Source: Malacoraja senta
Lineage: Eukaryota
Assembly: GCA_038087875.1 (NCBI GenBank)
Contig: JAXLNO010005255.1
Location: 62,001-126,000 of the forward strand
DNA length: 64,000 nt
Reading direction: 5' to 3'
Part shown: positions 42,458 to 62,830 of the stretch, in pieces
Numbering within the stretch: the first letter of the stretch is position 1
How the letters are laid out: every line of letters begins with the position of its first letter
Notes under the pieces: generated by a model
What the model was told of the DNA's origin: nothing
Database searches by the model: none
The model's input: only the letters and a program-made list of their open reading frames with translations
Translations under genes and position numbers: made by a program

Positions 42458-44103
42458 GGGTATAGATAGTATAGAGAGTAACTGTCTCTTTCCCAGGGCA
42501 GTGGAGACTAGAACTGGAGGTTTAAGGTGATGGAAGAGAAATGTCAAGGGGATCTCACCGCAGTAGTTATCTAGAATGAGCTGCAGGGGAGATAGTAGAG
42601 GCAGACATAATCACAATGTCTATAAAGCATTTGGACTTTTGGTAGGAAAGTCAGGGAGGGATAAGGGCGTAATGTAATTGTAGATAAACATCTCGGTCAG
42701 CATAAACAAGTTTGGGCAAATGGGCCTGTTTATATGCTGCATGATTCAGTATATTTTAAGATTCTTTCTGTGGTTTACATGTTGCTATCTCTATTAGCCA
42801 GTATAAGCACTGAAAATGGCTCAATCAGTCTACACCAGAGAGAACACTGCCTGAACCAAAGGAAGTGAGATATGTAACATAGGTTCTTTAGTTTTTTTTA
42901 GTTTAGATACACAGCACGGAAACAGGCCTTTCGGCCCACCGAGTCTGCACCGACCAGCAACTAACCCGCACACTAATACTATCCTTTGCACACGAGGGAC
43001 AATTTGGCACATGCATCAAGCCAATTAACCTACATTCCTGCATGTCTTTGGAGTGTGGGAGGAAATCGAAGATCTCAGCGAAAATCCAGGCAGGTCACGG
43101 GGAGAACGTACTAACTCCTTACAGACAGCACCCATAGTCGGGATTGAAACCGGGTCTCTGGCACTGCAAACACTGTAAGGCAGCAACTCTACCGCTGTGC
43201 CACTGTGCTGCCCTTATTGGTAACTTTGTGTGATCTTATTTTGTTATGATGCAAATTCTATGGGAACGCTTTCTCAATGAGATAGATAATGATGTAGAAA
43301 CAACGAACTGCAGATGCTGGTTTGTACCAAAGAGCTGGAGTAACTCAACGGGTCAGAGGTGTGCTACAGTATCTCTGTAGAAAAAGGATTGGTGATGCTG
43401 GGTGAAGCTTCAGGTTGGGATCCTTCTTCAGACTGATGTATCGGGTTGGGACCCTTCTTCAGAATAACCCTGCTTGAGACTGAAGTAGGGTCCTGACACG
43501 AAGTGTCATCCAGCCTTTTTCTCCAGAGATGCTGCAGGTCTCGCTGAGATACTTTAGCACTCTGTGTCTAAGGTTGATAATGAGTTGTTCAATCCTGATG
43601 TTTTGTGATGTTAATTTCTGCATGTTCACAGGGCAGACTGTGAGAGTAAACAGTTGAAAAACTAGTCTAGCAGGAAATGTGTGGTATTTGAGTAAGTGTG
43701 ATTGTGGGGCCTCTCCGGTGAGATGATTGGGGAACTCCCTGACAAAGGGGGATGTGGTGAACAAGTCACCAGGAGGTCATATCAAAGCAGAAGTTAAATG
43801 TTACATTGATATTTTTAGTCTGCTCTTGATGTACTGGCATGGTGCAATCCGATTTGGACAACTTACTGTATATTGCAGCTCAAGATGATATAGATATATA
43901 GCATTGGAACAGGCTCTTCAGCCCACCAAGTCCACGCTGAACAGCGATCACCGTACAGTAGCAATATCCTATAGACTTGCAACAATATATAATCTTTACC
44001 AAACCCTATTAAACTACAAACTCATCTTTGGAGTGTGGGAGGAAGCTGGAGCACCCAGGGAAAACCCACAGGTAGAATGTAAAAACTCCATACAGACTGA
44101 TTC

Positions 44104-44570
44104 CCGGGATGGCAGGACTTTCATATGAGGAAAGACTGGATAGACTTGGCTTGTACTCGCTAGAATTTAGAAGATTGAGGGGGATCTTATAGAAACTTAC
44201 AAAATTCTTAAGGGGTTGGACAGGCTAGATGCAGGAAGATTGTTTCCGATGTTGGGGAAGTCCAGAACAAGGGATCACAGTTTAAGGATAAGGGGGAAGT
44301 CTTTTAGGACCGAGATGAGAAAATCATTTTTCACACAGAGAGTGGTGAATCTGTGGAATTCTCTGCCACAGAAGGTAGTTGAGGCCAGTTCATTGGCTAT
44401 ATTTAAGAGGGAGTTAGATGTGGCCCTTGTGGCTAAAGGGATCAGGGGGTATGGAGAGAAGGCAGGTACAGGATACTGAGTTGGATGATCAGCCATGATC
44501 ATATTGAATGGCGGTGCAGGCTCGAAGGGCCGAATGGCCTACTCCTGCACCTATTTTCTATGTTTCTATG
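44104..44570 (+). mobile_element. CR1 3' fragment inserted into a minus-strand SINE
   Basis: DRLDAGRLFPMLGKSRT...GEKAGTGY*; tail (TTCTATGT)n. SINE halves at 43900-44100 and 44570-44650. Confidence 0.9.
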
Positions 44571-45773
44571 ACAGCACCCATGGTCACGATTGAACCTGGC
44601 GGTCTCTTGAGCTGTAAGGCAGTAACTCTACCGCTGTTCCACCGTGTCACCCTTTTGTGGGGGATCATGCAGAAGCCTCCTCGTGGCGATCCACGGAACC
44701 GACAACACGATGCACTCTGGGACGCGTCGGGCGACCTATTCTGTCAACATGTTGGACGACGACAGAAGCCAACAGTGAGCTACACCTCGTCTGACACACG
44801 AGCGAATGAACCCTTGTTAGACTAATCAACTGAAGGTTACGACTTATAAATATGATGTGATGCAACTAATTGAGAGTGCAGCATAGAGAGTGCAGCACAG
44901 AAACAAGCCCTTTTACCTATTGTCCATACTAACTATTTTGGGACCTGATCTCTTTTTATCTTCCTGATATTTCCAATACCTACCCCTAGATTTTACTCTT
45001 TAACGACACACGGAGCAATAAATGGTGGCCTGTGAACCAAATAACTGCCGTGACTTCCCTTTGTGGGTGGAATATCTGAATATCATATTTCCAAATGTTG
45101 ATCAGTAAGGGCGACATGGTGGGGCAGCGATAGAGTTGCTGCCTTAAAGTGTCAGAGCTCCGGGTCCGATCCTGACTATGGGTGCTGTATGTGCGGAGTT
45201 TGTACATTTTCCCCATGACCAATGGGTTTTCGCCAAGATCTTCGGTTTCCTCCCACACTCCAAAGACGTACAGGTTTGTAGGTTAATAGGCTTGATATAA
45301 ATGTAAATTGTCCTTCGTGTGTACGATAGTGTTAATGTGCGGGGATCTGTGCGGACTCGTGCTGAAGGGCCTGTTTCCACACTGTATCTCTAAACTAAAC
45401 TAAAATAATCTAAGTAAGCTTGACATTTAGAATCATGTACAGCATAGAAACAGGCCCTTCAGCCCAGCTTATCTATGCCAGCCAAGATGCCCCATCTACC
45501 CTTGACCCATCTATCTATATTTTAGCTTAGTTTAATTTATTATTAATGTCACGTGTACTGTTTTGCAGTGAAAATGTTTCTTGTGTGCTATCCAGTCAGT
45601 GAAAAGACTACATTACTATGAAGCCGTTCACAATCTATAGATACAGGGTAAATGATATCATGTTTAGTGCAATGTAAATCCAATTGGTGTTTTGCCGATT
45701 TCCCTCCAAACCTTTCCTATCCATATAAATTTCTATTACTTGACAATAATTGCATTATTTTATTTGTGTCTAG

Positions 45774-46034
45774 GGCCTCACACACTGATCTACTACTACA
45801 CCCTGAACCACGGGAGTACTCATCTACCAGAATATAGTGTCGTGGGTGAACTGGATGGTTGTGAGATACAGTATTATGACAAAAACATGGTCATTACAGT
45901 TCCAAGACAGAAATGGATGGCGGCTGCATTTGACAGGAATTACTGGGTAACAAATACGGTCTCTGAAACTGATTTCCATGGAATCATCAAAGGGCAAGTC
46001 GATGAATGGATGCGGAGGCAGAACGAAACAGCAA
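45774..46034 (+). CDS. MHC class I-like gene, exon 2 (alpha1 domain)
   Basis: GPHTLIYYYTLNHGSTHLPEYSVVGELDGCEIQYYDKNMVITVPRQKWMAAAFDRNYWVTNTVSETDFHGIIKGQVDEWMRRQNETA aligns with class I alpha1 (H3, Y7, P20, G26, D29, D37, P-R-x-x-W, Y59-W60, N86 sequon N-E-T). Acceptor tttgtgtctAG, donor A|GTTAGT, 261 nt, phase 1/1. Confidence 0.93.
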
Positions 46035-46763
46035 GTTAGTTCATTCATTTCAATACATTTGGAGTGTGATCAATGTTCATAAAAAAACATCTCAAAGAAA
46101 TTTCTCGCTGTGCCAGAGACCCAGGTTTGATCCTGACTACACGTTCTCCCTGTGAACACAGATATTTCTGCCAGGTTCTCCGGTTCCGTCCCATATCTTG
46201 AAAATGTGAGAGTTTGTAGGTTAATTGGGCTCTGTAAATTACTCTTGTGTGCTGAGAATGGGTGAGGAAAGAGGGATTACATAGATGTGTAGGAAGGAAC
46301 TGAAGATGCTGGTTTACAGCAAAGATAGGCACAATGTGCTGGAGTAACTCAGCGGGACAGGCAGCATCTCTGGATACAAGGAATGGATGACTTTTCAGGT
46401 CAAGACCCTTCCTCAGACAGAGTGTTTCCCCTGACTTACTCCAGCATTTTGTGTCCATTTTGGGATAACATAGAACTAGTGTGAAAGATGATCGATGGTT
46501 GGCATGGAATTGGTGGGCAGAATGGCCCATTTCCATGCTGAGTCACTAACCTAAGAACTGCAGATGCTGCAAATGTGAAATAAAAACCAAAAATGCCATT
46601 GTCTGATGGCTTCATTGTCAGTTTATCACCATGGAAACCTGTCATTACCTTATCAGTGATACTCCCTATGTCCAACCATGCCTCCCACTCCTGTCTGTAA
46701 CTTACACATTCTCACAATTCTGAAGCATTAATTTTGTATCTCTTTCCATAGGTTCCATAGGTA

Positions 46764-46829
46764 ACCAATATTTCAATGATTTGTAAAATGATGTGCTTCC
46801 AGCATTTTACAAATCATTGAAATGTTGGT
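46764..46829. other. 27-bp near-perfect inverted repeat with a 12-nt loop
   Basis: accaatatttcaatgatttgtaaaatg-atgtgcttccag-cattttacaaatcattgaaatgttggt; the single mismatch is a G-U pair on the + strand. Confidence 0.85.
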
Positions 46830-48194
46830 GGCTTTTTGAATGGTTAAAATCCCTTGCGTACCTCACCAATTGTTTTTACTTTTATTGACAAATTTAGAAT
46901 GAAAAGTTGTGTGAAATATTTAAAGGATAACCTAAATGTCATTGTGGTTCAGCCGTAGTGATGGTGCCGTAGTGCTATTGACCCAGGGTTGATCCTGGCC
47001 TCAGGTGCTGTCTGTACAGAGTTTGTACGTACTCCCCGTGACCTGCGTGGGATTTCCCCGGGTTCCCCGGTTTCCTCCCACACTCCAAGCCTGTATGCCA
47101 AAGGGGATCACTGGTCACTGTGGACTCTAAGGGCTGTTTTCGTGCTATATCTCTAAATTATCTTGGGCACCAATTGTAAAGTAAGCTGTCCAAATCCATC
47201 TGCACCACACTTGTATATCCATATAAGTTGCAATTGGACATGTTTTATATTGTAAATCAATAAGTCCTATCACCATTACTGTGTTAATTCAATGACATTC
47301 GTAGTGTACCATTGAACAAAGCAGGACTAGGCATGGGGGAACCATGGTGAGGTGGGGGGGGGGGGACAAAGGAGGACCTGGTGTGGGAGACTTTATAACT
47401 TTGTCGGTGCCCTTTATGTGAAGAATCTTGAAATACGTTGGGTTTACAAAACAAAGAATTTCACTGTGACTTGTCACATGTCACTATAAAGTGTCATTCA
47501 TTCATGATTAATTATTTCTGAAAACATTGCTTTTTGTTACCTCTTCGGTTACACATTAAACACATTATATTATTAATCTTTAACTGGACTAAAACAGGGT
47601 GAGGGTACAAACAGGGAACAATACATCAAAATATTATGCACTGGGCATAATTTCTATCAATTTTCCACATCTTGCAATATTTATTATTATTTTCAAATTA
47701 TATGTGAATACATGTGAATGACGTTTATTACATTATCATCTGATTCATTGAACCATGTTTATTGAATCATATTGCCTTCAAAAATATTTTTTTAATTTGC
47801 ATTATTTATGGTGCACATATTATCTGCAACATTGTTATGTTTATGAGATTTATGAGCATATTGTCGGGGCTCAAGGGTGGGAACAAGAGGGAGAGATTGG
47901 GCAAGCCAGGGCTTTATTCCATGGAGCACAGGAGGCTGAGGGGTGATCATATAGGGGTGCTTAAAATCATGAGGGGAATTGATAGATGTATGCCCAGAGC
48001 CTTTTACCCAGAGAAGGGGAATCAAATAACCAGAGGACATGGGTTGAATGTGAGAGGGGGAAGATTTAATTGGAACTTGGGGGCAAACTTTGTGCTCAGA
48101 GAGTGGTCAGCATATGGAATGACCTGCCAGAGAATGGAGTTGCGGCAGGTACAATAACAATATTTAAAAGACACATGGACAGGGACATGCATAG

Positions 48195-48672
48195 GTAGAT
48201 AAAAGTGCTGGAGAAACTCAGCGGTTGAGGCAGCATCTATGGAGCGAACGAAATTGGCAACGTTTCGGGCCGAAAACCCTTCTTCAGACTGATGTGAGGG
48301 TGGGTGGGAGGGGGGGAGTGGGGCGCAGGAAGAAGAAAAGAAAAGGTGGAGCCAGTGGGCTGAGGGAGAGCTGAGTAGGGGAGGAGAAAGTAAGGACTAC
48401 CTGAAATTAAAGAAGTCAATGTTCATACCGTTGGGGTGTAAACTGCCCAAGCGAAATATGAGGTGCTGCTCCTCCAATTTACGGTGGTCCTCACTCTGGC
48501 CATGGAGGAGGCCGAGGGAAGAAAGGTCGGATTTGGAATGGGAGGGGGGAGTTGAAGTGCTGATCCACCGGGAGATCAGGTTGGTTGTTGCGAACTGAGC
48601 GGAGGTGTTGGGCGAGGCGATCGCCAAGCCTGCGCTTGGTCTCACCGATGTAGAGCAGCTGACATCTAGAGA
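48195..48672 (-). mobile_element. Penelope 3' fragment with an intact hammerhead-like core at 48259-48287
   Basis: RKLEEQHLIFRLGSLHPNGMNIDF; minus strand CUGAAGA-A-GGGU(UUUCG)GCCC-GAAAC-GUU. Confidence 0.85.
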
Positions 48673-49589
48673 GAAACGTTTTGAATGATGTCTACCCATT
48701 GCAGGGTAAATGGGACTAGCTTAAATGGGGTATCTTGATTAGCATGGACAAGTTGGGCCAAAGGGCTTGTTTCCCTGCTGTGTGACTCTCTCTATGACTG
48801 CTTTATAGCAAAGAGCGCTGCTGCCTCACAGCGCCAGTGATCCGGGTTCAATCATCTCCAGTGCAGTCTGTGTGGAGTATAAGCATTCTCCCTGTGACAA
48901 TGTTTGTTCTCCAGTTTCCTCCCACATACCAAAATGTGCTGAATTAGTAGATTAAGCCACCGCTGCAAATAGGTGGATTTGTGGCATTGATAGAAATGAG
49001 AAAGATCCGTTTTGGGGAAAATTAGTGTTGGAATAATTTTGTTCTCTGGGCTAGAGTGGGCTCAGGAGGCTGAAAGGCCTCTTTCTCTGTCACATGGATT
49101 TATGGGCCGTTATTTATCCTTGAATTGCCTTCTTTCTCAATTTAGTCAACAATGTAAAATTGAAGTAATTGTCTGGATTGAACTATTTAACAATTGTAGA
49201 TGAAAGGAAGAGCAGAGGCTGCTTTCCTCCACACAAAATGCTAAGGAACTCAACGGGTCAAGCGGCATCTTTGGAGAACATGGGAAGGCAGATATTTTGG
49301 GTGAGGATCCTACTTCAGACTGAAGTTGGGACACGTTAGAACATGCTTTGTACTCACACTTGCAGTCCAGTGTTAGTTTTCAAGGATTTTTTGTTATTCA
49401 CAGCTTGTAGTTGTTACATATTCAGCAGACAGAACATGAGCAAACTAAAGCACCTGCAAAGCACAACTAAAAGACCGCAGAAAGAAGCTTGAAAAGAAGG
49501 CTCTTATCTAAACAAAGTACTTTCAAGAGAGAGTTAGATTTAGCTCTTAAGACGAAAGGAATCAAGGGATATGGGGGAAAAGATTAGTT

Positions 49590-51360
49590 AAAACAAATGT
49601 AGGTCCCTTGCAGTCAGAAAAAGGTGAATTGATCATGTGGAACAAGGACATGGCAGACCAATTGAATAACTACATTGGTTCTGTCTTCACTAAGGAAGAC
49701 TTAATTAACTGCCGGAAAGAGCAGGGGACTGGGGGTCAAATGAGATGGAGGAATTGAGTGAAATCCAGGTTAGCCGGGAAGTGGTGTTAGGTAAATTGAA
49801 TGGATTAAAGGCCGATAAATCCCCAGGGCCAGATAGAGTGCATCCCAGAGTACTTAAGGAAGTAGCCCCAGAAATAGTGGATGCATTAGTGATAATTTTT
49901 CAAAACTCTTTAGATTCTGGAGTAGTTCCTGAGGATTGGAGGGTAGCTAATGTAACCACACTTTTTGAAAAGGGAGGGAGAGAGAAGTGGGGAACCTGCT
50001 AGAGTCAGTTATTAAAGATGGGATAGCAGCACATTAGGAAAATGGTGAAATCATTGGACAAAGTCAGCATAGATTTATGAAAGGTAAATCATGTCTGACG
50101 AATCTTATAGAATTTTTCGAGGATGTAACTAGTAGAGTGGATAAGGCAGAACCAGTGGATGTGTTATATCTGGACTTTCAGAAGGCTTTCGACAAGATCC
50201 AACATAAGTGATTAGTATACAAACTTAAAGCACATGGTATTGGGGGTTCAGTATTGATGTGGATAGAGAACTTGCTGGCAGACAGGAAGCAAAGAGTAGG
50301 AGTAAACGGGTCCTTTTTAGAATGGCAGGCAGTGACTAGTGGGGTACCTCAAGGCTCAGTGCTGGGACCCCAGCTATTTACAATATATATTAATGATTTG
50401 GACGAGGGAATTGAATGCAACATCTCCAAGTTTGCGGATGACACGAAGCTGGGGGGCAGTGTTAGCTGTGAGGAGGGTGCTAGGAGGCTGCAAGGTGACT
50501 TGGATAGGCTAGGTGAATGGGCAAATGCATGGCAGGTGCAGTATAATGTGGATAAATGTGTGGTTATCCACTTTGGTGGCAAAAACAGGAAAGTAGACTA
50601 TTACCTGAATGGTGGCCGATTAGGAAAAGGGGAGATGCAACGAGACCTGGGTGTCATGGTACACCAGTCATTGAAAGTAGGCATGCAGGTGCAGCAGGCA
50701 GTGAAGAAAGCGAATGGTATGTTAACATTCATAGCAAAAGGATTTGAGTATAGGAGCAGGGAGGTTCTTCTGCAGTTGTTCAGGGTCTTGGTGAGACCAC
50801 ACCTGGAGTATTGCCTACAGTTTTGGTCTCCTAATCTGAGGAAGGACATTGTTGCCATGGAGGGAGTACAGAGAAGGTTCACCAGACTGATTCCTGGGAT
50901 GTCAGGACTTTCATATGAAGAAAGACTGGATACACTCTGCTTGTATTCGCTAGAATTTAGAAGATTGAGGGGGGATCTTATAGAAACTTACAAAATTCTT
51001 AAGGGGTTGGACAGGCTAGATGCAGGAAGATTGTTCCCGATGTTGGGGAAGTCGAGAACAAGGGGTCACAGTTTAAGGATAAAGGGGAAATCTTTTAGGA
51101 CTGAGATGAGAAAAACATTTTTTACACAGAGAGTGCTGAATCTCTGGAATTCTCTGCCACAGAATGTAGTTGAGGCCAGTTCATTGGCTATATTTAAGAG
51201 GGAGTTAGATGTGGCCCTTGTGGCTAAAGGGATCAGGGGGTATGGAGAGAAGGCAGGTACAGGATACTGAGTTGGATGATCAGCCATGATCATATTGAAT
51301 GGCGGTGCAGGCTCGAAGGGCCGAATGGCTTACTCCTGCACCTATTTTCTGTGTTTCTAT
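49590..51360 (+). mobile_element. CR1 LINE, 5'-truncated (~1.8 kb); 338-aa open RT C-terminus at 50254-51270
   Basis: KLNGLKADKSPGPDRVHPRVLKE...VPEDWRVANVT, then SGVPQGSVLGP...KFADDTKL...GEKAGTGY*. Internal deletion near 50000. Confidence 0.95.
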
Positions 51361-51963
51361 GTTTCTAAAAGCAGGAATGGGGTACTGATTCTAGATGCAG
51401 GCATGATCATATTGAATGGCGGTGCTGGCTCGAATGGCCGAATGGCCTGCTCCTGTGCCTATTTTTCTATGTTTCTATAATTAGTATACATTCGGCTATT
51501 GGTGGTGTTTCTTGAAAACACGAAGACGAGAGAATGTAAAGGATCTGCAGAACAACTAAAAGACTGCAGAAAGCAGCTTGAAAAGGAGGCTCTTCATCTA
51601 TACAACATAATTATGTTTTATTCAGCTATCATTGTTTGTAGAGTTTCTTATTGGTATGAAAACATCATCCAAGTTTTGACCCTTCCTTATTACTCCTGGT
51701 CCCAGGGGCATGGTTGGCATTAGCTCATTACATTCATCCTAATAAAGGGTTGGTGTTCACAGTTGTGCCTAGATTTTTATCAATTACAACCTTGAGTTCA
51801 CAAACTGTTCTTTGTCTCTGGGCTAAAGTTCACAGACTCTCCTTTTCAAGGAGTGAGCAGTTTTAAGCAAACTGACTTCAGCAAATCCTTACAAATTCCA
51901 TCACCCCCCCCCCCCCACTTTGATTCATCAATCAATGCCAGAGGGAATGAATCATCTAAGTAA

Positions 51964-52645
51964 AGGGGCCTGTCCCACTTACGTGCCCTTGGAATGCAAA
52001 TTACGCGTTGAGCCACGATGGTCCGGCGAAGGTCGGGTGCGATTACATGCGTACGCACAGCCGTCTGGAGCGCGTGACGTTATTTGAAGATGGACACAAA
52101 GCTGGAGTAAGCCAGTGGGACCGGCAGCATCTCTGGAGAGAAGCAATGGGTGACGTTTCATGTCGAGACTCTTCTTCAGTCTGAAAAGAAGGGTCTTGAC
52201 CCGAAACATCACCCATTGCTTCTCTCCAGAGATGCTGCCGGTCCCGCTGAGTTACTCCTGCATTTCGTGTCTATCTTCAATTTTCTTGGCCCCGCTCTGG
52301 GAGTAGAAGTGGGGGCGGATCCGGACTGCAACGGCTGTGAGCCCCAGGCCGAGTTCGGCGATCGTTCGCCTGCTTCTGCTCCTGTTGAAAGTGAGACTTT
52401 GCGTCGCGCCAGGGTCTTGGGCCTGTCCCACTTTGGCCGTCAGTTCCGCGACAGGCCGTTGGCGCGCGAAGATTTCGTTCACTACAAAATTATTGGAGCC
52501 CCGCGCGATGTCGCGCACAACTCCATACCCCTCCGCGCTTCCAAGTGGGACCGGCCCCGCGCGGCCATACGATGCCCGTGCGCTTCAACGCGACCACAAG
52601 GTCGCATAATTTGTGTGCCAAGGACACGTAAGTGGGACAGGCCCT
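51964..52645. mobile_element. Harbinger MITE with TAA TSD that contains a Penelope-end foldback (52088-52280)
   Basis: TIRs aggggcctgtcccacttacgtgcccttgg / agggcctgtcccacttacgtgtccttgg. TAA at 51961-51963 and 52646-52648. Confidence 0.85.
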
Positions 52646-53635
52646 TAAGAATACCAAGGAAAGGTAGCGCAGCTACACATCACTGGATATCTTTAACCTG
52701 TTCAATGCCACCGCCGAGTACACTAGGGGTCATGGCCAATAGTGAAAAATAAACTTGGCAGTGAACAGCTTAATGGTCTCCATATTTTAGAGAAAGCCTT
52801 CAATGCCCATGAGGGGTGAGCCTTATTATATCTATGTTTCTCTAAATATAGGAAGCACTTTTGTGGTAAAAGATGGGTCAGCTCGGGCCTCGAAAAGATC
52901 CAACCTTATGTGCAGCTTTATATTTGTTTATATGCAATAAGCAAAAAGAACACAATAGAAGATAAAACATGATAATAACTATAAGCAAAGCCAAGAGATC
53001 GTGGCCTTACACGAGTTGCTGCCTTGCAGCACCAGAGACCCTGGTTTGAACCTGACTACGAGTGGTGACTGTACGGAGTTTGCATGTTCTCCCCGTAACC
53101 TGTGTGGCTTTTCTCTGAGATGTAGGTAAATTGGCTTGGTGTAAATGTAAATTGTCCCTAGTATGGGCTGAAGGGCCTGTTTCAGCACTGTATCTCCAAA
53201 GCAGTGGGGGGGTCGTGACCCCCAAGGGGGTCGTTTGGGGTTTTCCGGGGGTCATGAAGGGGTTGTAAAGAACATCAATTTGTTGAGCCCATTTTTAGGA
53301 ACCTAACAAAGGTACATACCACACACAGTTTTTTATTCACGTATGCGCGTACGTATACACGGGGCCTATGAGAGGGGGGTGCAGGGGGTACATCGTACCC
53401 GGGCTCGGAGTCCAAAAGGGGCCCGGGAGCTGAAGGAAGGGGGGGGGGCGGGAATTTCCTGAAATCTCAGAAAATTTTTGCATATATTTTGTGAAGACTA
53501 GCATTCACATTTTGTGCCTTCAGAGTTTTATATATCGTAATTCGTAGAAATTGTGATCCATAATAAAGCAGGGAATTTTCACAAGCGGATGTGTGGTCGG
53601 GGTAACCTGATTAAAAGAGGGGGAAGGGGAAGACC

Positions 53636-54230
53636 CATCACTACTGATGGATCCTCCCTGTAGGAGGAGGGAGAGCACTAGGACCCAGCAGAGTCATCAC
53701 TACTGATGGGTCTTCTGTGTAGGTGGGGGGGAGCACTAGGACCCAACAGAGTCATCACTACTGATGGATCCTCCCTGTAGGAGGAGGGAGAGCACTAGGA
53801 CCCAGCAGAGTCATCACTACTGATGGATCCTCCCTGTAGGAGGAGGGAGAGCACTAGGACCCAACAGAGTCATCACTACTGATGGATCCTCCCTGTAGGA
53901 GGAGGGAGAGCACTAGGACCCAGCAGAGTCATCACTACTGATGGGTCTTCCGTGTGGGGGGGCAGGGGGGGGGAGCACTAGGACCCAGCAGTCATCACTA
54001 CTGATGGGTCTTCCCTGCAGGAGGGGGGAGAGCACTAGGACCCAGCAGAGTCATCACTACTGATGGGTCTTCCCTGCAGGAGTAGGGGGAGAGCACTAGG
54101 ACACAGCAGAGTCATCAATACTGATGGGTCTTCCCTGCAGGAGGGGGGGGGGGAGAGCACTAGGACACAGCAGAGTCATCAATACTGATGGGTCTTCCCT
54201 GCAGGAGGGGGGGGGGGGGAGCACTAGGAA
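53636..54230. repeat. 59-bp minisatellite, ~10 copies
   Basis: Unit catcactactgatggatcctccctgtaggaggagggagagcactaggacccagcagagt. The register shifts by 1 nt per 60-nt line; later units vary in a G-run. Confidence 0.95.
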
Positions 54231-54529
54231 CCAGCAATCAGACCATGTGCTGTCTGCATGGTTTAGGTTGTGGGCCTGGTGCTATGCCGGGAACTCTGGT
54301 GAGGTGATGGCTCTGGCCCGCTGGTGGCCGGTGGAGAGGCGAGGGTCGGCAGAGTCGCTGGTGGAGGCCCGTGGGGAGCTGGAGTAGAGATATGGGCAGC
54401 AGCATCATTGGCTTTCTGAAGACAGTGAAGGTCGGCGACAGTGGCTGCGGTGGCCTCGCCCAGGGAGGTGGTGAGAGTCAGGAGCCGCGGCTGTTTCAGT
54501 GGTCCGGGCCTGGGTTTGGGTCAGTGTGT

Positions 54530-54559
54530 GGATGGGTGGGTGTGAGTGAGTGGGTGAGG

Positions 54560-54590
<31 letters not shown>

Positions 54591-54636
54591 TATGTGAGTA
54601 GGTGAGTGAGTGTGTGTCTGAGTGTATGTGTGTGTT
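54530..54636. repeat. (GT)n/(GTGA)n microsatellite
   Basis: gtgtgtgtgtgtgtgtgtgtgtgt flanked by gtgagtgagt. Confidence 0.95.
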
Positions 54637-55975
54637 AGTGGGAGGGTGAATTTTATAAATGAAGTTAAAACCATTAGATCTGTTGAACTTGTTAACAGAC
54701 TATTGACTTGGTAACCTGTTTCCAAATGTTTGTGTTAGCTTCAGAATACTATTAACAATTCCAGCAACAGTAGCTTCTGCAGAGGTCATTTAGCAAACTC
54801 AAGCTGATTAAGAATTATTTAAGGTCGACAATGTCTCATGAATGTCTTGTGGATTTGGCCAGGCTAAGTATTCAAAGTTAAAGTCAGTTTTATTCATCAC
54901 ATACACCCGAAGGTGCAGTGAAGTGAATTTGCCAGCAGTGATACACGTAAAAAGAACACACAATACACAATAAAATTGAACACAAACATCCACTACAGCA
55001 TTCTTCACTGTGGTGGAAGGCAACAAGTTTCAGCCAGTCCTCCTCCTTTGTTCACCTGTGTTCGGGGCCATAACCCCTCCGTAGTCGCATCTAGGGACGG
55101 ACCAATGTACAAGGCCCTCTCGTCGGGATGATCCAAACTCTGACGTTGGGACGGACAAACACACTCTGCGGCTTGGAGGTCCCGACTCGGCACTTTCCTA
55201 GTGGAGACCGCAGCTTCAGGATGTTATAGGCCGCAGGCCAGCGGTTCGAGCTCGTCTCTGGTGAACCCCGGCAAGGGATCCCAGGATCCGGATGGTAAGT
55301 CCACGCCACGCTCGCGGTTAGAAGCTCCGCAGACCACAGCTCCACGGTGTCAACGTATTGAATCAATAGTATTGAATCATACATTGCCAGAACAATACAT
55401 TTTCATGCTGTGATTTGACATTTTTCACACAAAAAAGGCCAGGAAAGCTCTTTATATAAAGTAAATTTATATAATAAAAGTAAAACTTTTACTTTTTACT
55501 AATAATTATGTCTTTTGATGATATGATCTGCATTGAAACATAAAAGGATGTTTCAATGTGAATTCTTTCTCCTTATCTGTATTGTAGCATAAACAAAGAT
55601 GTTCAAAACAAAGGTAGATAAAATGCTGGAGAAACTCAACGGGTGAGGCAGCATCTATAGAGTGAAGGAAAACAAATGTGCTTTCTGATCCTTTTATGTT
55701 ATTTATACTTATTTATATTTATCATGGAGGGTGTATAGGGACATAAGGCCTCAAATGCAGAAAATCAACAGAGCGCCCCATTCCACCCCTCTCTCATCTT
55801 CCGTACCCCTTTTTGCCGTGCAGGCTACAGCTCATGGCATAAAACTGTAGCATAGTGGATAAAAACAGGATGACTAATGGAGAAGGGAAGGGGGCCCAAA
55901 ATAAACTTTGTACCCACTGATAAAATTCCTCTGAGGCCCTGCGTATACACGCACAAACAGTGTGTGTTGTGAACC

Positions 55976-57724
55976 ATGTCTTCCAAGACGCGCATGTATA
56001 GTGAAACATTTCACAAGTTGGGCTTCACAAGCATTGTTCCAAATCCGTGGTCAAGCTGCAATGTGTTCTCTGTGCCAAGGTGTTGAGTCACGAGAGCATG
56101 AAGCCCAGCAAACTGAAGATCCATTTGGAGTCTTGTCACAGCAACCTGGCGGGGAAGAGCGTGGACTATTTCAAACGAAAAGAAGCCATAACTCAAGGGA
56201 TCCCGCATCTATTCAACGGGTCACTGTGCTCATCAAAATGAAGCAGCGTTGGAGGCTTCATACCGGATTGCTTATCGAATCGCACAGACTAAGAAACCTC
56301 ACAGCATCGGTGAAGAGCTTATCAAGCCATGCCTTCTCGAAACAGCGAAGTTGGCGCTGGGGGAAGAGCAGTCAAACAAGTTCAGGCAGATTTCCCTTTT
56401 GAATGACACAGTCAAAAGTAGAATCTCGGATATGAGTAATGATATTCTGCTGCAAGTAGTGAGGGCTGTGACGAGCAGTCCAGTGTATTCACTGCAACTG
56501 GGCGAGTCAACAGATGTTGCCTCATGTTCCCAACTGCTAGTCTACATTCGTTACCTCGATGGAGTAGCCATGACGGAGGAGTACATGTTCTCGGAGCCAT
56601 TGGCTACTACCACTCGGGGAGAAGATGTGTTCAGAATGCTGGAAGCCTTCCTCATCAAACATGAGCTTGGCTGGAAATGCCTTGTTGGGATGTGTACAGA
56701 TGGGGCACCTTCCATGGTCGGTTGCAGATCCGGTTTCCAAGACTTCGTGAATGATGTCGCTCCACATGTCTCCTTCCCCCACTGCATGATACATCGCTAT
56801 GCTTTAGCGATGAAGACTCTCCCTCTTGGTCTTCGAGAAGTGCTTTCAGATGTGGTGAAGATTGTGAACCACATCCGAGAGAGTGCAACAAACTCAAGAA
56901 TCTTCAAGCGATGTGTGAAGAAATGGGCATCGATTTCACTATTCTGTTATTCCACACAGAGGTGCGCTGGCTTTTGCGTGGTAAAGTTCTCAATCATGTG
57001 ATTCAACGTTGAGAGGAAATAGTGTTGTTCTTGGAGAGAAGGGGTACTGAGAAGGAGAATCAGCTTCATGAAAAGATGCAAGTTGAACTGTTCGTGATGA
57101 AGGTTGCTTACTTGGTTGACTTCTTCGCTGAGGTGAATTCCTTGAACCTGTCGCTTCAAGGAATCCTCCCAATGGCATTCAGGAGGAACCTTTACCAGAG
57201 AACAGACGGTGACATGGCTATCTTCCCTGAGATGACGACTCTCCTGGATGCTACGCCTGATGCTGAATGCCACTTCCACGAGGAGATCTCAACCCACCTT
57301 CTGGCAATTAGTGAACCCATCGAACGTTACTTCCCCAGACTGGACGACCGCTCTCGTGATGAGTGGATGCTCTGACCCTTTTCCGTTGAAGACGGTGGCA
57401 TCAGCGATACTGACGTGACCGAAGGTTGAATTTTACTGAATTCGTGAAGATGCGCAACTCAAGAGTGACTTCATGGAACAAGAGCTCGCCACGTTTTGGC
57501 TGAAAGTGAAGGAATGTCCTGCTCTTTCGAAGAGGGCCCTGACCCTATTGGTCCATTCCCCCTCAACCTCTCACTGTGAGGGTGGATTCTCAACTATGGT
57601 AACTCTGAAAACGAAGGTACGCAATAGGCTTGTGATCGACACTGACATGAGGTGCTGCCTGTCGAGCATTCGTCCACGTTTTGATTGCCTGATGACTGCG
57701 AAGCAATTTCAGCCATCCCATTGA
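55976..57724 (+). pseudogene. hAT Charlie-type transposase (ZBED5/ZBED8-like family) with multiple frameshifts
   Basis: MSSKTRMYSETFHKLGFT, LQCVLCAKVLSHESMKPSKLKIHLESCH (BED-like finger), EASYRIAYRIAQTKKPHSIGEELIKPC, SLQLGESTD, CTDGAPSMVG, HCMIHRYALA, CEGGFSTM, KQFQPSH*. Confidence 0.93.
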
Positions 57725-57949
57725 CTGAGCAATGGCAGACATGTTTTAATAAATCGGGCTGTTTTTTTTCAAATTTTGTTTCAGAGGTCACGGTACTGAT
57801 CAAGAGTGCCTGATGGGGTCGTGGGGCCAAAAAGGTTAAGAACCACTGCTCTAAAGCTTAAAACTAAAGGGGCTAATAAAGGCCACAAAGTGGCTTTAGT
57901 GAGTCGGATTACAGAAAATCCCACATCTTTTTCATGGTTTCATGGTTAG

Positions 57950-58640
57950 TTTATTGTCACATATACCAATTAAGGTACATTGAAATGCAGACTACCATAC
58001 ACCATACTAAAAAAAAGCAACAAGACACACAATAACATAAAAGTTAACATAAACATCCACAACAGAGGAGCCCGCACGTTCCTTACTGTGATGGAAGGCA
58101 ATAAAGTCTAATCTCCTTCCTCTTTATCTCCCGCAGTCGGGGCAATCAAACAATCTGCAGTCGGTGGTCGAAACCCCCCGTTGAGGAATCGAAACTCCCA
58201 CGTCGGAGCGGTCGAAACTCTTGCGGCTTGGAGATCCCGGATGTCGGTCTCGACCGTAGACCACGGGCTCCGCGATGTTAAAGTCTTGCAGGCTCTCACA
58301 GTTGGAGCCCTAAAGTCGATCCCCGACAGGGATCGCGAGCTCCATGATGGTAAGTCCACAGGCTCCTGCGATGGATCTCCCGGTCGATCTCTAGCAAAGG
58401 CCGCCATTCATCAATGTTAGGCCGCATTGTGGACGGAGATACGATACAGAAAATATCGCATCTACGTCGAGGTAAGAGATTAGGAAAAGTTTCCCACAAC
58501 TCCCCCAACCCCCACCCCCAAAACAAGCTAAAGAACACTAAAGAATATACATTTAACACGTACAAAACAGACACAAAGAAGGAAGGGACAGACGACTTTT
58601 GGCGAGGCAACCATTGCAGCAAAAGGTGGATTGCTTAAGG
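57950..58640 (-). repeat. Unclassified non-coding interspersed repeat (related copy at ~54880-55340)
   Basis: Shared blocks taacataaacatccac.acag, actgtg.tggaagg and ggatggtaagtccac. No recognisable ORF. Confidence 0.5.
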
Positions 58641-58739
58641 ATATAGAAGGGAATATGTGCTTGGAGTTTGGCGAGGTTTGGTTTCACCAAGGAAGACATG
58701 TAGAATAGTAAGGACCATTAATAGTAAGTACATCATAAA

Positions 58740-59530
58740 ATCCTCCAACATTTTTGCCACCTCCAACGGGATCCCACTACTGATCACATCTTCCCATCTC
58801 CACCCGTTTCTGCTTTCCGCAGAGACCGTTCCCTCCGAAACTCCCTGGTCAACTCGTCCCTTCACACCCAAACCACCCGCTCCCCGGATACTTTCTCCTG
58901 CAACTGCAGGAGATGCAACACCTGTCCCTTTATGTCCCCCCCTCGACTCCGTCCAAGGACCTAAAGTCTTTCCAGGTGAGGCAGAAGTTCACTTGCACCT
59001 CTTCCAACCTCATCTACTGTATCCGCTGTTTCAGTTGTCAACTTCTCTACATCAGTGAGACCAAGCGCAGGCTCGGCGATCGTTTTGTTGAACACTTCCC
59101 CTCAGTCCGTCTTACCCTACCCGATCTCCCGGTGGCTCAGCACTTCAACTCCCCCTCCCATTCCCAATCTGACCTTTCTGTCCTGGGCCTCCTCCATTGT
59201 CAGAGTGAGGCCCAGCCCAAATTGGAGGAACAGCACCTCATATTTTGCTTGGGTAGTGTATACTCCAGCGGTATGAACATTGACTTCTATTACTTTCGAT
59301 AGCCCTTGATTTCTCTCTCCATCCCCTCCCCCTTCCCAATTCTGCCACCAGTCTTACTGTCTCCGCCGACATTCTATCTTTGTCCCTCCCCTGACATCAG
59401 TCTGAAGAAGGGTCTCGACCCAAAACAATGCCCATTCCTTCTCTCCAGGGAAGCTGCCTGACCCGCTGAGTTACGCCAGCATTTTGTGTCTCTCTACGAT
59501 TTTAACATCTGCAGCATCTGCAGTTCTTTC
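58740..59530 (+). mobile_element. Penelope 3' fragment (GIY-YIG plus terminal block)
   Basis: FTCTSSNLIYCIRCFSCQLLYISETKRRLGDRFVEH...PKLEEQHLIFCLGSVYSSGMNIDF. Confidence 0.92.
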
Positions 59531-59657
59531 TTACACATGGAGAATCAATGTGGAGAATGCTAACATGCAGGGACACTTTGAAGTTAAGCAAGAAGGAGAT
59601 GTTGGATCACTTGAAGAGAAATGTGGATAAATCCCCAGGATAGAGGGGTGTAGTGGA

Positions 59658-60065
59658 TGATAATAATAATCGTTGAAAACATTAGTGCCGTGCTGGTTTC
59701 CGATGGGCACGGTGACGGACGCACCACACATCTCTCCTCCATGCAACTGGCAAGCTCCTCTTTTATCTCTACACATGCGTCTTCCATCAACGTCTTCTGC
59801 ATCATCTTGATTGGCCGTCCTGGGTCAAGTCTTCCATGGGTGGGTTCCCACAGCACAACCTTGTTTGCTGGCATTTCTGGGTGGCGGAGCCAGTGACCTG
59901 CGAGCCTCATCCTTCTCAACGTGATCTTCTCGGTCAGAGGTGGATTCTCCCCATAGAGCTGGGCGTTGGTGATGTGGTCCCTCCATCTGACATTTTGAAC
60001 TTTTCCGAGCATTCGGGTGTAGGTACCATCGAGAGACTAGGACAGTGCTGGAGTGAGAGTCCATG
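59658..60065 (-). mobile_element. RTE-clade LINE 3' fragment
   Basis: QNVRWRDHITNAQLYG...RRMRLAGHWLRHPE..ANKVVLWEPTHGRLDPGRP; short (ATT/ATC)n tail. Confidence 0.8.
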
Positions 60066-60270
60066 CCTCACACCCGTACAATAATATGGTCTCTACAGTT
60101 GTACGGAAGGCCAAATATTCAGGCTGTAGTTCAGTGACAAGTAGAGTTCTGCAGGGATCTGTGCTGTGACCCTTGCTACTTGTGACATATATAAATGACT
60201 TGGACCCTGGTGTTCAGAAATTACCCAGTCATAACAATTAATCAAATAATGATTTTTATTTTTATTTCAG

Positions 60271-60544
60271 ATTATCACTACGTTCAAGGACAGTTTGGTT
60301 GTGAGGTGAACGATCACAGTCCCACTGTAGGGATATTGAAGTTGGCTTTTGATGGAAGATATGCATTTAGTTTTGATAAGGACAAACTAAAGTGGACGGT
60401 GCATGATCCAATAGCTGAGCTTCAAAGAGAAATGGGACAAGAATGAAAAAATGAACCGTTATTTCAAGAGCTTGTTAGAACATGACTGTGTGGATCTATG
60501 GCTTACATACTATGCAATTGGAAAGACATACCTGACCAGAAAAG
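60271..60544 (+). pseudogene. MHC class I-like gene, exon 3 (alpha2 domain) with a frameshift at ~60420
   Basis: Acceptor tttttatttcAG, donor G|GTGAGT. Reads (N)YHYVQGQFGCEVNDHSPTVGILKLAFDGRYAFSFDKDKLKWTVHDPIAE / FKEKWDKNEKMNRYFKSLLEHDCVDLWLTYYAIGKTYLTRK, with the C101-C164 pair, DG119-120, W133 and K146-W147. Length is 274 nt versus the canonical 276. Confidence 0.92.
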
Positions 60545-61209
60545 GTGAGTTCAGAACAAAGGATGTTGTTTTGTGATGGTAGGCAATGAGTAATATTTCA
60601 CTCTGAGGCAATGAGTAATATTATCTCTGACCCAATCATGACAGAGGGAAAGGTCATTCGGCCCATTGATTCTATGCTAGTTTTCTATGCAATGTCGACA
60701 AACTGTTCCACAGCTCTCTCTCACAACTTGCACTCAGCTCCCTCGGATTCTCCTTGCATTCAGCTCTACGACGGATAATTTGCAATGTCCAACTAACTCA
60801 CCGGCACGTCTTTGGTATACGGGACAAAACTGGAGCACATGGAGGAAGCCAACTGAGTCATAAGGTCATAAGTGATGGGTGCAGCATTAGAACATTCGGC
60901 CCATCAAGTCGACTTCGCCAGTCAATCATGGCTGATCTATCTCTCCCTCCTAACCCCATTCTCCTGCCTTCTCCCCATAACCCCTGACGTGCATACTAAT
61001 CAAGAATTAAAAATATCCATTGACGGACTCCACAGCCTTCTGTGGTAAATAATTCCACAGAATCACCACCCTCTGACAAAATAAATTCCTCCTCATCTCT
61101 TTCCTAAAGGAATGTCCTTTAATATTGAGACTATGACCTCTCGTCATAGACTCTCCCACCATTGGAGACATCCTCTCCACATCCACATCTATCCAAGCCT
61201 TTCACTATT

Positions 61210-62535
61210 TGTTTGTTTTTAAAATATTTTTATTAGAAGCATGTGCATATCATAATACAAACATTTCTTATATATCAATCCTACTTAGCTAATAGGTGGG
61301 AGTCCAGCTATCAAAATAATAGTGGTCCTCCTTTATCAATTGTATATTAAATCTGCTTCTATTTAGTTTTTTTTTATAGATAGAAAGTGAGAAATTAAAA
61401 AAAAAAGGCATGAAAAAGAAGAATGGAATAATTTACCAATAATACAACTTTGGAGATAGGTCCGTAGGTTATAAAGCATAACTATTCATCTAATCCTGAG
61501 CTTGGATTTCAGTCAGATTCCTATGCTGAACCAATTTACCCTTTCAAAAAATCAATAAATGGAGACCATATTCTATTAAATAATTCATGTTTTTCAATTA
61601 AGACAAGTCTAGTTCTTTCCAAATGTAAGGTCTCCGACATTTCCATAATCCACATTTTAATTGTGGGGGTTATAGGACCTTTCCAAAATTTTAATATTAA
61701 TTTTTTCCCAATTATTATACTATAATCAAGAAAGTTTCTTTGGTTTATTGTAAGTCTTAGGCTTTGTTCTGATATTCCTAATATTATTATGAGTCGGGAT
61801 CCAATTGGGTATTGACTAATTCAGAAATTATTCTGAAAATGTCCGTCCAGAAATTTTTGATTTTTATACAATTTACAAAGGTATGAGTTAAGTTAGCCTC
61901 TAAATGCTGGCATTTATCACAAATAGGAGAGATATGTGGGAAGATTCTATTTAATTTTGTTTTAGAATAATGTCATCTATGTAATACTTTAAATTGTATT
62001 AAGGCATGTCTGGCATTTAATGAGCATTGATGTATATATTGTAGACTTTCGTCCCAAATATCTTTCGTTATGGGTTGGCCTAATTCATTTTCCCATGTGT
62101 GTCTATATAAATCCGTCGGCGGGACCTCACTATCTAAGAGGGTATTATAAATATGAGATATTAATTTTTCTGTATTAGGATGTTTATTCAAACATTCATC
62201 AAGGATTTCTGGTTCCCTAGTTCTGTAATCTTGTGTATTTGATTTAATGTAATCTCTAAGCTGTAAATATCTAAAAAAGTTATTTGAGTGTGGTCCGTAA
62301 ATCTGTTGTAACCCCTGAAATTACAGAAAAGTGCCTTTCCTATAAAGATGTCCCATCTTTTTAATTCCTTAATTTTTCCATTGTGTAAAGCCTTTATCCA
62401 ACATGGAAGGTTTGAATAAAGGGTTGTTTATAATGGGGAGACAGTGACAATTATCCAATTTTAAAGTCTTTTTTAACTGTTTCCAAATTCGTATACCACT
62501 ATATATTATAGGATTTTCACTATAGGTGTTTTAAT
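61210..62535 (-). mobile_element. L1-clade LINE ORF2 3' fragment
   Basis: LISHIYNTLL...WENELG..I..DIW..SLQ.IHQCSLNARHALIQFKVLHR, downstream Cys/His knuckle region, A-rich tail at ~61210-61235. Confidence 0.85.
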
Positions 62536-62539
62536 GCAA

Positions 62540-62830
62540 TTTTGTGGGAGCAAACATAATCGAACCAATTTCAAAAGGCAAACAGTCTTTCACTATTTTG
62601 TATGATTCAATGAGGTCCCCCCTTATTCTTCTAAACCCCAGCAAGTACAGGCCCACTGCCATCAAATGGTCATCATATGTTAACCCATTCAATCCTGGGA
62701 TCATTCTTGTACACCTCCTCTGGACCCTCTCCAGAGCCAGCACATCCTTCCTCAGATATGGTGCCCAAAATTGCTCACAATGCTCCAAATGTGGCCTGAC
62801 CGGCGCCTTATAGAACCTCAGCATTACATC
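62540..62830 (-). mobile_element. CR1 RT fragment
   Basis: FYKAPVRPHLEHCEQFWAPYLRKDVLALERVQRRCTRMIPG. Confidence 0.85.

What the first reader, a model, noticed from the sequence alone, without database searches (positions are those of the whole stretch)
45774..60544. Divergent nonclassical MHC class I with a hydrophobic predicted groove
Seen (by-eye alignment, HLA-A2 numbering): Y7, Y59, R84, K146, W147 and Y171 are retained, but Y/F123>A, T143>F, Y159>L and W167>L. Groove-facing positions are largely hydrophobic or bulky: Y9, F70, I73, I74, W81, V95, F99, L114, L116, F143, F156, L159. Established: classical class I conserves the peptide-terminus anchors, whereas CD1/MR1-type molecules lose them and bind lipids or metabolites. 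Cartilaginous fish have several nonclassical lineages. Inference: a molecule binding hydrophobic peptides, lipopeptides or other non-peptide ligands. It may be a known or an unnamed lineage; I cannot tell which by eye.
Basis: partly seen in the sequence, partly recalled or inferred. Interest (0 to 1): 0.75.

Follow-up and report, generated by a model that had tools for sequence, protein, structure and literature searches.

The report
Skate UGA gene, frameshifted null allele
This is the front half of a skate's copy of UGA, a known shark-and-ray MHC class I-like gene reported to carry lipids rather than peptides. The copy in this genome is switched off by a 2-base deletion that is still variable in the species.

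Summary
Exons at 45774-46034 (alpha1) and 60271-60544 (alpha2) encode a non-classical MHC class I groove. I also found the leader exon at 21719-21791. Alpha3 is not in the window.

Y7, Y59, R84, K146, W147 and Y171 are kept. Positions 123, 143, 159 and 167 are A, F, L and L.

The lineage is not new. The closest solved structure is PDB 9CH4, "shark nonclassical MHC class I, UGA". In a maximum-likelihood tree the window sits inside the UGA clade (support 100/99), among skates. It is 94% identical to the Amblyraja radiata orthologue and well apart from classical UAA.

A 2025 review reports, as a personal communication, that UFA and UGA bind CD1d-type lipids.

The alpha2 exon is 274 nt, not 276. 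CC is missing after 60419, which gives a stop at 60444-60446. Public read contigs show the deletion is real. A second sample of the same species also carries the CC form, and a related species carries only the CC form. This is a segregating null allele, not an assembly error or an old pseudogene (dN/dS 0.2-0.4).

The scan had already noted a frameshifted skate UGA on another piece of this genome (s1-140082).

The parts
21719..21791 (+). Exon 1: start codon and signal peptide (24 codons plus 1 nt), donor G|GTAAGT
   Evidence: tblastn with the Leucoraja orthologue P0001 hits residues 1-25 almost identically. Sequence and donor were read. The exon is 92% nt identical to the Amblyraja exon 1 at L001 10001-10073.
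21792..45773 (+). Intron 1 (about 24 kb), full of transposon remains
   Evidence: Collinear at 86-92% nt identity with the Amblyraja intron. A reverse-transcriptase ORF lies at 38246-39544 on the minus strand.
45774..46034 (+). Exon 2: alpha1 domain (261 nt, open, phase 1/1), N-glycosylation site NET at HLA position 86
   Evidence: Matches 9CH4 at E 7e-36. 91% aa identity to Amblyraja P0154. 93.9% nt identity to L001 41881-42141.
46035..60270 (+). Intron 2 (14.2 kb), carrying LINE and other transposon remains
   Evidence: RVT_1 ORF at 50254-51270. ORFs at 56249-57724 have no Pfam hit. Partly collinear with the Amblyraja intron.
60271..60544 (+). Exon 3: alpha2 domain, 274 nt instead of 276. 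C101 and C164 are present. The frame changes at 60419/60420.
   Evidence: blastn against three skate orthologues gives a 276-nt exon with 2 gap letters in the window.
60419..60420 (+). Site of the 2-nt deletion. CC is lost from GAG CCC TTC; the other skates have GAA CCC TTC or GAG TCC TTC.
   Evidence: MAFFT of four skate exons. Read laying shows 'CC put in behind 60419' in run X2 (same organism, other sample) and in X4 (related species). It is absent in X1 and X3.
60444..60446 (+). Premature TGA. After ...PIAE come 8 out-of-frame codons (LQREMGQE), then the stop.
60545..64000 (+). Start of intron 3. The alpha3, transmembrane and tail exons lie beyond the window.
   Evidence: tblastn finds no alpha3 match in the window. 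The window end aligns to L001 66074, and the Amblyraja alpha3 is at L001 74155-74436.

Best explanation
The window holds exons 1-3 (leader, alpha1, alpha2) of a skate orthologue of UGA. UGA is an old shark-and-ray non-classical MHC class I lineage whose shark member has a solved structure, PDB 9CH4.

Shown: the intact form of the gene, seen as an allele in the same species and in all relatives, encodes a class I heavy chain. It has the C101-C164 disulphide and the N86 glycan site. It keeps part of the A- and F-pocket residues (Y7, Y59, Y171, K146, W147). It also has lineage-invariant replacements: F99, L114, F156, L159, G97, W81, mostly F143, and L167.

Inferred from the report on the lineage and from orthologues:
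- It pairs with beta2-microglobulin.
- It is routed through endosomes by a Tyr-x-x-Ile/Val tail, seen in orthologues. That exon is outside the window.
- It holds a lipid-like ligand with its acyl chains in the greasy groove, for display to T cells, as CD1 does.

Shown for the allele in this window: CC is lost after 60419, which shifts the frame and ends at a TGA at 60444-60446. The product would lack the alpha2 helix, alpha3 and the membrane anchor.

Inferred: the mRNA is probably degraded, because the stop lies well upstream of later exon junctions.

Shown: the deletion is recent and still segregating. The rest of the exons are clean and under purifying selection.
For: - Lineage, structure hits: alpha1 and both alpha2 pieces hit 9CH4 far above everything else. 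The E-values are 7e-36, 4e-15 and 3e-12, and the next hits are at 1e-9 or worse. The 9CH4 entry title is 'Crystal structure of shark nonclassical MHC CLASS I, UGA'.
- Lineage, protein search: among 1.84 billion representatives only 3 proteins reach E<1e-30, then there is a jump to 1e-18.
- Orthologues: named orthologues exist in Amblyraja, Leucoraja, Rhinoraja, Pristis, Mobula, Hemitrygon and seven shark genera.
- Tree: the careful ML tree gives the UGA clade 100/99. The window sits in the skate clade (100/98). The classical Triakis UAA clade is separate.
- Gene structure: exons are collinear with the Amblyraja gene and have the same boundaries.
- Deletion is real: contigs from X1 (0 differences over 60100-60632) and X3 carry it.
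- Deletion is polymorphic: in X2 the shared contig ends exactly at 60420. A separate contig carries the CC at depth 1087, against 2414 for the flank. Related species X4 has the CC and no other frame change in the exon.
- Selection: dN/dS over alpha1+alpha2 is 0.36 against Amblyraja, 0.30 against Leucoraja and 0.19 against Rhinoraja.
- Expression: a spliced full-length mRNA contig of the Leucoraja orthologue exists (L005).
- Function: the lipid report for UFA and UGA is in PMC12562908. Groove replacements are conserved across 18 UGA rows. The Y-x-x-I/V tail is present in orthologues.
Against: - The ligand is not shown by anything I could run or read. The lipid statement is a personal communication in a review, and I could not see the ligand in 9CH4.
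- Y7, Y59, Y171, K146 and W147 are kept, so peptide or lipopeptide termini could still be held.
- The crude hydrophobic share of the groove is only slightly above classical molecules.
- The kind of runs X1 and X2 is not on record, and their depths (227 and about 2400) are too high for plain whole-genome data. 'Heterozygous individual' is therefore an inference from contig structure.
- X1 may be the sample the assembly came from.
- Exons 4 onward were not seen, so further defects in this allele cannot be excluded.
Confidence: 0.85

Rival explanations
1. The frameshift is an assembly or sequencing error and the gene in this animal is intact.
For: The deletion lies in a short C run (CCC to C), a context where errors occur. 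All other features of the exons are intact.
Against: Contigs built from other public runs carry exactly the window's sequence across the site. These are X1, one 556-nt contig with 0 differences, and X3, 60380-60498 with 0 differences. In X2 the contig graph branches exactly at the site, with both forms present.
Confidence: 0.03
2. It is an old, fixed pseudogene: UGA has been lost in this skate species.
For: There is a premature stop in alpha2. Earlier scan notes report other broken class I-like copies in this genome (AI notes, unchecked).
Against: There is only one lesion. Splice sites, start codon, cysteines and glycan site are intact. dN/dS is 0.19-0.36. The in-frame CC form is present in another sample labelled as the same organism.
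Confidence: 0.05
3. The intact protein presents hydrophobic peptides or N-acylated lipopeptides, as chicken YF1*7.1 or Mamu-B*098 do, rather than CD1d-type lipids.
For: Y7, Y59, Y171, K146 and W147 are conserved across UGA. After 9CH4, the next best structural matches include YF1*7.1 with N-acyl ligands (Z 21.6).
Against: All class I folds score within Z 20-21.6, so the match does not discriminate. T143, Y159 and W167 are replaced throughout the lineage. The only statement on record says the lipids are like those of CD1d (PMC12562908).
Confidence: 0.2
4. It is a divergent classical (UAA-type) peptide-presenting gene.
For: The class I fold, R84, K146, W147 and three of the four anchor tyrosines are present in the window.
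Against: The tree places it in UGA at 100/99, away from the Triakis UAA clade. The Amblyraja orthologue model is about 30% identical to shark UAA 6LUP, against 55-58% to UGA 9CH4.
Confidence: 0.01

Closest known systems
UGA, elasmobranch non-classical MHC class I (PDB 9CH4, shark)
   Same: Same lineage. Identity to 9CH4 is about 65% in alpha1 and comparable in alpha2. Domain lengths are the same, including four residues between positions 141 and 146 once CC is restored. The invariant groove residues are the same: F99, L114, F156, L159, G97, W81. The clade has 100/99 support.
   Different: This is the skate orthologue, not the shark protein that was crystallised. The allele carries a 2-nt deletion and is null. 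Only exons 1-3 are in the window.
Annotated skate orthologues: Amblyraja radiata XP_032898133.1, Leucoraja erinacea XP_055521885.1 and XP_055486429.1, and the Rhinoraja longicauda protein P0164
   Same: 94% identity over alpha1+alpha2 to Amblyraja (85-98% per exon piece across Amblyraja and Leucoraja). The exon boundaries are identical. The introns are collinear at 86-92% nt identity.
   Different: Those genes have a 276-nt alpha2 exon and open frames. NCBI names them only 'class I histocompatibility antigen, F10 alpha chain-like'.
'UGA-sister' lineage (Leucoraja XP_055486430.1, P0006)
   Same: It is the nearest other lineage (joins UGA at 100/98). It shares L159, F156, Y155 and G97. In Leucoraja it lies about 42 kb upstream of UGA in the same orientation.
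   Different: It is only 43-46% identical, with C at 99, W at 167 and an insert between alpha2 and alpha3. There is no copy of it in this window.
CD1 (lipid-presenting class I-like family of tetrapods)
   Same: The reported function is the same: lipid display (PMC12562908). Orthologues have a tyrosine-based Y-x-x-I/V tail like CD1b and CD1d. Peptide anchors at 143, 159 and 167 are lost.
   Different: There is no sequence-level membership. No CD1 chain appears among the PDB sequence hits of alpha1 or alpha2. Chicken CD1-1 matches the fold no better than classical class I does (Z 20.7). Y7, Y59, Y171, K146 and W147 are kept.
Classical elasmobranch class I (UAA; Triakis scyllium alleles, PDB 6LUP)
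   Same: Same fold, disulphide, glycan site, and R84/K146/W147 in the window.
   Different: It forms a separate clade at about 30% identity (Amblyraja model against 6LUP). UAA has T143, Y159 and W167.

Membership tests
UGA lineage (elasmobranch MHC-Ib) | Groove domains cluster with the named UGA structure 9CH4, to the exclusion of other class I lineages | tested here: met
   9CH4 is the top hit for all three pieces by wide margins. The entry title names UGA. The clade has 100/99 support.
UGA lineage (elasmobranch MHC-Ib) | Lineage-constant groove residues (F99, L114, F156, L159, L160, G97, W81, L167, Y155) | tested here: met
   All are present in the window. Each occurs in 17-18 of 18 UGA rows.
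UGA lineage (elasmobranch MHC-Ib) | Full class I heavy-chain layout: leader, alpha1, alpha2, alpha3 (C1-set), transmembrane region, short tail with Y-x-x-I/V | tested here: inconclusive
   Leader, alpha1 and alpha2 were found. Alpha3, the transmembrane region and the tail lie beyond the window end by collinearity with Amblyraja. They are present in orthologues.
UGA lineage (elasmobranch MHC-Ib) | Open reading frame (a working member) | tested here: not met
   The alpha2 exon is 274 nt, CC is missing after 60419 and there is a TGA at 60444-60446. The deletion is confirmed in independent contigs. An intact allele exists in the species.
UGA lineage (elasmobranch MHC-Ib) | Linkage to the MHC (class Ib cluster) | not testable with these tools
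   The window holds no other gene. There are only indirect hints: in Mobula and Heterodontus, UGA and other class I genes share one chromosome record. Verissimo 2023 (PMC10751288) maps elasmobranch Ib genes to the MHC.
UGA lineage (elasmobranch MHC-Ib) | Binds lipid | not testable with these tools
   The only source is a personal communication in PMC12562908.
CD1 | Sequence homology to CD1 alpha1/alpha2 closer than to other class I | tested here: not met
   No CD1 chain appears among the PDB sequence hits at E up to 1. CD1-1 gives Z 20.7, no better than classical chains.
Classical class I (UAA) | Full set of peptide-terminus anchors (Y7, Y59, R/Y84, T143, K146, W147, Y159, Y171, plus W167 and Y/F123) | tested here: not met
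   Positions 143, 159, 167 and 123 are F, L, L and A. The classical rows have T, Y and W at 143, 159 and 167, and S, Y or F at 123.
Classical class I (UAA) | Falls in the UAA clade | tested here: not met
   The Triakis UAA clade is separate, at 99/95.

The most novel reading that the evidence does not exclude
A common, naturally segregating knock-out of a CD1-like lipid-presenting gene in a wild skate. Animals with two deleted copies, as X1 and the assembly suggest, would live without UGA. That would give a natural experiment on whether this 400-million-year-old lineage is dispensable, or is backed up by the neighbouring UGA-sister gene.
Probability: 0.4. Interest if true: 0.45.

Novelty: new member of a known kind. 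Interest (0 to 1): 0.25.

Why it matters
The finding matters little for discovery. UGA is a named lineage with a deposited structure, and skate orthologues are already in NCBI under generic names. It does give three useful results:
- A correct label for an unannotated, frameshifted gene in this genome.
- Evidence that the reference allele is a null that still segregates. Anyone cloning UGA from this species, or using this assembly to count functional class Ib genes, needs to know this.

If the null is frequent, it offers a natural loss-of-function test of a CD1-like system in cartilaginous fish.

Tried and rejected
- Pfam on the pieces: alpha1 gives no hit, and the alpha2 N-part is just under the MHC_I cut-off (28.2 against 28.3 bits). 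Pfam alone would have missed the gene.
- Paper searches for 9CH4, UGA/UFA and CD1-like shark molecules found only two papers that mention the lineages and no primary report.
- No alpha3, transmembrane or second class I gene is in the window (tblastn).
- I could not fold the window's own protein. The tools take no read-through of the frameshift by reference, and I did not type the joined sequence. I folded the 94% identical Amblyraja ectodomain instead (pLDDT 78).
- No coordinates are returned, so pocket volume and surface hydrophobicity could not be computed.
- The crude hydrophobic count over 42 groove positions separates UGA from classical chains only weakly, so I do not lean on it.
- The RNA search in the same species found no run of known RNA type. 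Only relatives' RNA runs hold 2 of 22 words.
- The search of earlier findings by sequence was blank.
- The fetch of an annotated region does not hold the Amblyraja record.
- 8GM8, possibly UFA, was considered as the lineage. It was rejected because it is far weaker than 9CH4 for the window. The neighbouring lineage P0006 also matches 9CH4 far better.
Full report
**What is there**

Alpha1 is 45774-46034: 261 nt, ctAG|GG acceptor, A|GTTAGT donor. Alpha2 is 60271-60544: cAG|AT acceptor, G|GTGAGT donor.

Alpha1 is open. Alpha2 is 274 nt, which is 3n+1. Its first part reads through ...HDPIAE and then runs into a TGA at 60444-60446. The rest of the domain, from ...KWDKNEKMNRYF to the end of the exon, is open in the next frame. 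C101, C164 and the N-glycosylation site (NET at position 86) are present.

tblastn with an orthologue also found the leader exon at 21719-21791. It has a start codon, 24 codons and a G|GTAAGT donor. There is no alpha3, transmembrane or tail exon in the window.

**Which lineage**

Against all PDB sequences, alpha1 hits chain 9CH4_A at E 7e-36, about 65% identical. The next hits are near 1e-9. The two alpha2 pieces hit the same chain at 4e-15 and 3e-12.

I folded the Amblyraja orthologue (pLDDT 78) and searched the PDB with it. This returned the title of 9CH4: "Crystal structure of shark nonclassical MHC CLASS I, UGA", released 2026-03-18. It was first by both Foldseek (E 1e-33) and VIA-align (Z 24). 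All other class I folds fell between Z 20 and 21.6.

A profile-free search of 1.84 billion representatives found only three proteins at E<1e-30, and then a gap to 1e-18. These and further relatives are NCBI models called "class I histocompatibility antigen, F10 alpha chain-like" or "MR1-like". They come from Leucoraja, Amblyraja, Rhinoraja, Pristis, Mobula, Hemitrygon, Pristiophorus, Heptranchias, Heterodontus, Stegostoma, Scyliorhinus, Cetorhinus and Mustelus.

The window is 91% (alpha1) and 96-98% (alpha2) identical to Amblyraja radiata XP_032898133.1.

I built a careful maximum-likelihood tree of 75 alpha1+alpha2 rows:
- The UGA group gets 100/99 support.
- The window sits inside the skates (100/98), next to Amblyraja+Leucoraja, with Rhinoraja outside.
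- A Leucoraja gene of the "UGA-sister" kind (P0006) joins UGA at 100/98.
- The clade holding the polymorphic Triakis scyllium classical alleles, named, is elsewhere.

**The literature I could read**

Verissimo et al. 2023 (PMC10751288) describe the elasmobranch class Ib clusters and mention UFA as CD1-like, citing unpublished data. [quoted passage not shown] It also says that crystal structure and mass spectrometry suggest they bind lipids comparable to those of human CD1d, as a personal communication. I found no primary paper.

**Residue check**

I aligned the window with MAFFT against 17 other UGA rows, the sister gene and seven classical rows. The results:

| Position (HLA-A2 numbering) | Window | 18 UGA rows | Classical rows |
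|---|---|---|---|
| 7 | Y | Y16, F2 | Y in six, V in one |
| 59 | Y | Y17, Q1 | Y in six, F in one |
| 171 | Y | Y16, F1, L1 | Y in six, F in one |
| 146 | K | K17, R1 | K |
| 147 | W | W18 | W |
| 84 | R | Q7, R5, K4, E2 | R |
| 143 | F | F13, L3, M1, S1 | T |
| 159 | L | L18 | Y |
| 167 | L | L17, Y1 | W |
| 123 | A | A12, I5, V1 | S, Y or F |

Further lineage constants are F99, L114 and F156 (18/18), G97 and W81 (17/18), I74 (17/18), and F or I or L at position 70.

My one reservation is about "largely hydrophobic". A simple count over 42 groove positions gives 0.67-0.76 for UGA against 0.57-0.71 for classical chains. The case rests on which residues changed and how constant they are, not on the overall share.

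**The frameshift**

blastn of the exon against three skate loci gives a 276-nt exon with two gap letters in the window. MAFFT places the gap after 60419. The window has GAG--CTTC where the other skates have GAACCCTTC or GAGTCCTTC. With the CC, the text reads ...AE-PFKE-KWDK..., exactly as in Amblyraja and Leucoraja. It also has the four residues that 9CH4 has between positions 137 and 142 of its own numbering.

I laid the contigs of four public runs on 60100-60700:
- **X1** (organism A): one 556-nt contig with no difference from the window.
- **X3** (labelled organism B): three contigs covering 60191-60498 with no difference.
- **X2** (organism A, a different sample): a shared contig ends exactly at 60420. 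A separate contig with "CC put in behind 60419" has depth 1087, against 2414 for the flank. Further depth at that place comes from contigs without the insertion.
- **X4** (organism C, about 3% diverged): its only contig has the CC. Its four exon substitutions are one synonymous change plus T>N, H>N and L>H, all states seen in other skates. It has no other indel in the exon.

The deletion is therefore not an assembly error. It is not fixed in the species, and it is absent in a close relative.

dN/dS over alpha1+alpha2, with the broken codon masked, is 0.36 against Amblyraja, 0.30 against Leucoraja and 0.19 against Rhinoraja. dS is 0.09-0.21, similar to the 8-14% divergence of the collinear introns. 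The gene was under purifying selection until very recently.

The earlier scan note s1-141691 on this window offered "recent pseudogenisation, null allele or assembly error". The reads favour null allele.

One caveat: the run kinds are not on record, and the depths (227 and about 2400) are odd for whole-genome data. "X2 is a heterozygote" is an inference from the contig graph.

**Surroundings**

Window 14435-64000 is collinear with the Amblyraja UGA locus (L001 73-66074) at 86-92% identity. In Amblyraja:
- alpha3 lies 20 kb after alpha2, at L001 74155-74436;
- the transmembrane exon is near 80.7 kb;
- the tail exon, ending in DYQNIPPNQNVPC, is at 87.7 kb.

All of these correspond to places beyond the window end.

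The rest of the window is transposon debris:
- a Harbinger-type DDE_Tnp_4 ORF at 1492-2481;
- reverse-transcriptase ORFs at 38246-39544 and 50254-51270;
- GIY-YIG (Penelope-like) ORFs at 15110-15955 and elsewhere.

In Leucoraja the UGA-sister gene lies about 42 kb upstream of UGA on the same strand. The 21.7 kb upstream of exon 1 in the window do not reach it.

A 1,992-nt spliced contig from SRR13269358 carries the whole Leucoraja open reading frame, so the orthologue is transcribed.

**How it most likely works**

Shown: the intact allele encodes a class I heavy chain of the UGA type.

Inferred from the report on the lineage and from the conserved features:
- It associates with beta2-microglobulin.
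- It cycles through endosomes by its Y-x-x-I/V tail, conserved in orthologues.
- It binds a lipid-like ligand in a groove where F99, L114, F156, L159, L167, F143 and W81 give a greasy lining and G97 gives depth.
- The retained Y7, Y59, Y171, K146 and W147 may hold a polar head group.

A lipopeptide or hydrophobic-peptide ligand, as in chicken YF1*7.1, is not excluded.

The window's allele makes none of this. Translation stops eight codons after the deletion.

**Verdict**

The scan had met the same kind of thing before in this genome. s1-140082 is a frameshifted skate UGA with a 2-base deletion on another piece. s1-140219, s1-140134 and s1-140274 cover UGA 3' exons and the tail. I checked the UGA label myself through the PDB title and the tree.

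Noticed in passing
window 1492-2481 (-), 38246-39544 (-), 50254-51270 (+), 15110-15955 (-), 37646-38230 (-), 58913-59302 (+): The introns and upstream region are packed with transposon remains. There is a Harbinger-type DDE_Tnp_4 ORF, two reverse-transcriptase ORFs that are about 95% alike to copies in the Amblyraja locus, and several ORFs with a GIY-YIG motif (Penelope-like elements).
   Followed up: partly
window 56249-57724 (+): A run of ORFs of 250, 117 and 83 aa looks like a decayed transposase (hAT-like by eye). Two of them were scanned against Pfam and gave no match.
   Followed up: partly
L002 and L004 (Leucoraja contig JAMYXN010000384.1): The nearest other lineage ('UGA-sister', XP_055486430.1) lies about 42 kb upstream of the UGA gene on the same strand, so the two lineages form a tandem pair. 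Against the PDB it matches 9CH4 at 3e-60 but 8GM8 only at 3e-32.
   Followed up: partly
proteins P0152, P0153, P0155, P0169 (Leucoraja LOC129716032 isoforms X1-X4): NCBI gene models fuse the UGA heavy chain to a GPR139-like seven-helix receptor. This is probably a read-through artefact of annotation. The same clustering put a plain GPR139-like protein in the UGA cluster.
   Followed up: no
window 45860-45862 (Cys at HLA-type position 31, motif LDGCEI): There is an extra, apparently unpaired cysteine in the third strand of alpha1. In the 15 orthologues aligned it is C in all but one (Y in Pristis P0165), and it is absent from the sister gene and classical chains. Its role is unknown.
   Followed up: no
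window 60100-60700, runs X1 and X2: Contig depths of about 227 and about 2400 over intron and exon alike are far above what whole-genome data of a skate would give. The runs' kind is not on record. They may be enriched libraries.
   Followed up: no
window 60114-60205 and 60604-60687: Short interspersed repeats flank the alpha2 exon. Hundreds of contigs at 80-90% likeness pile up there in every run laid.
   Followed up: no
window 54540-54600: A (GT)n microsatellite lies inside intron 2. It is seen as VCVCVCV / THTHTH ORFs.
   Followed up: no
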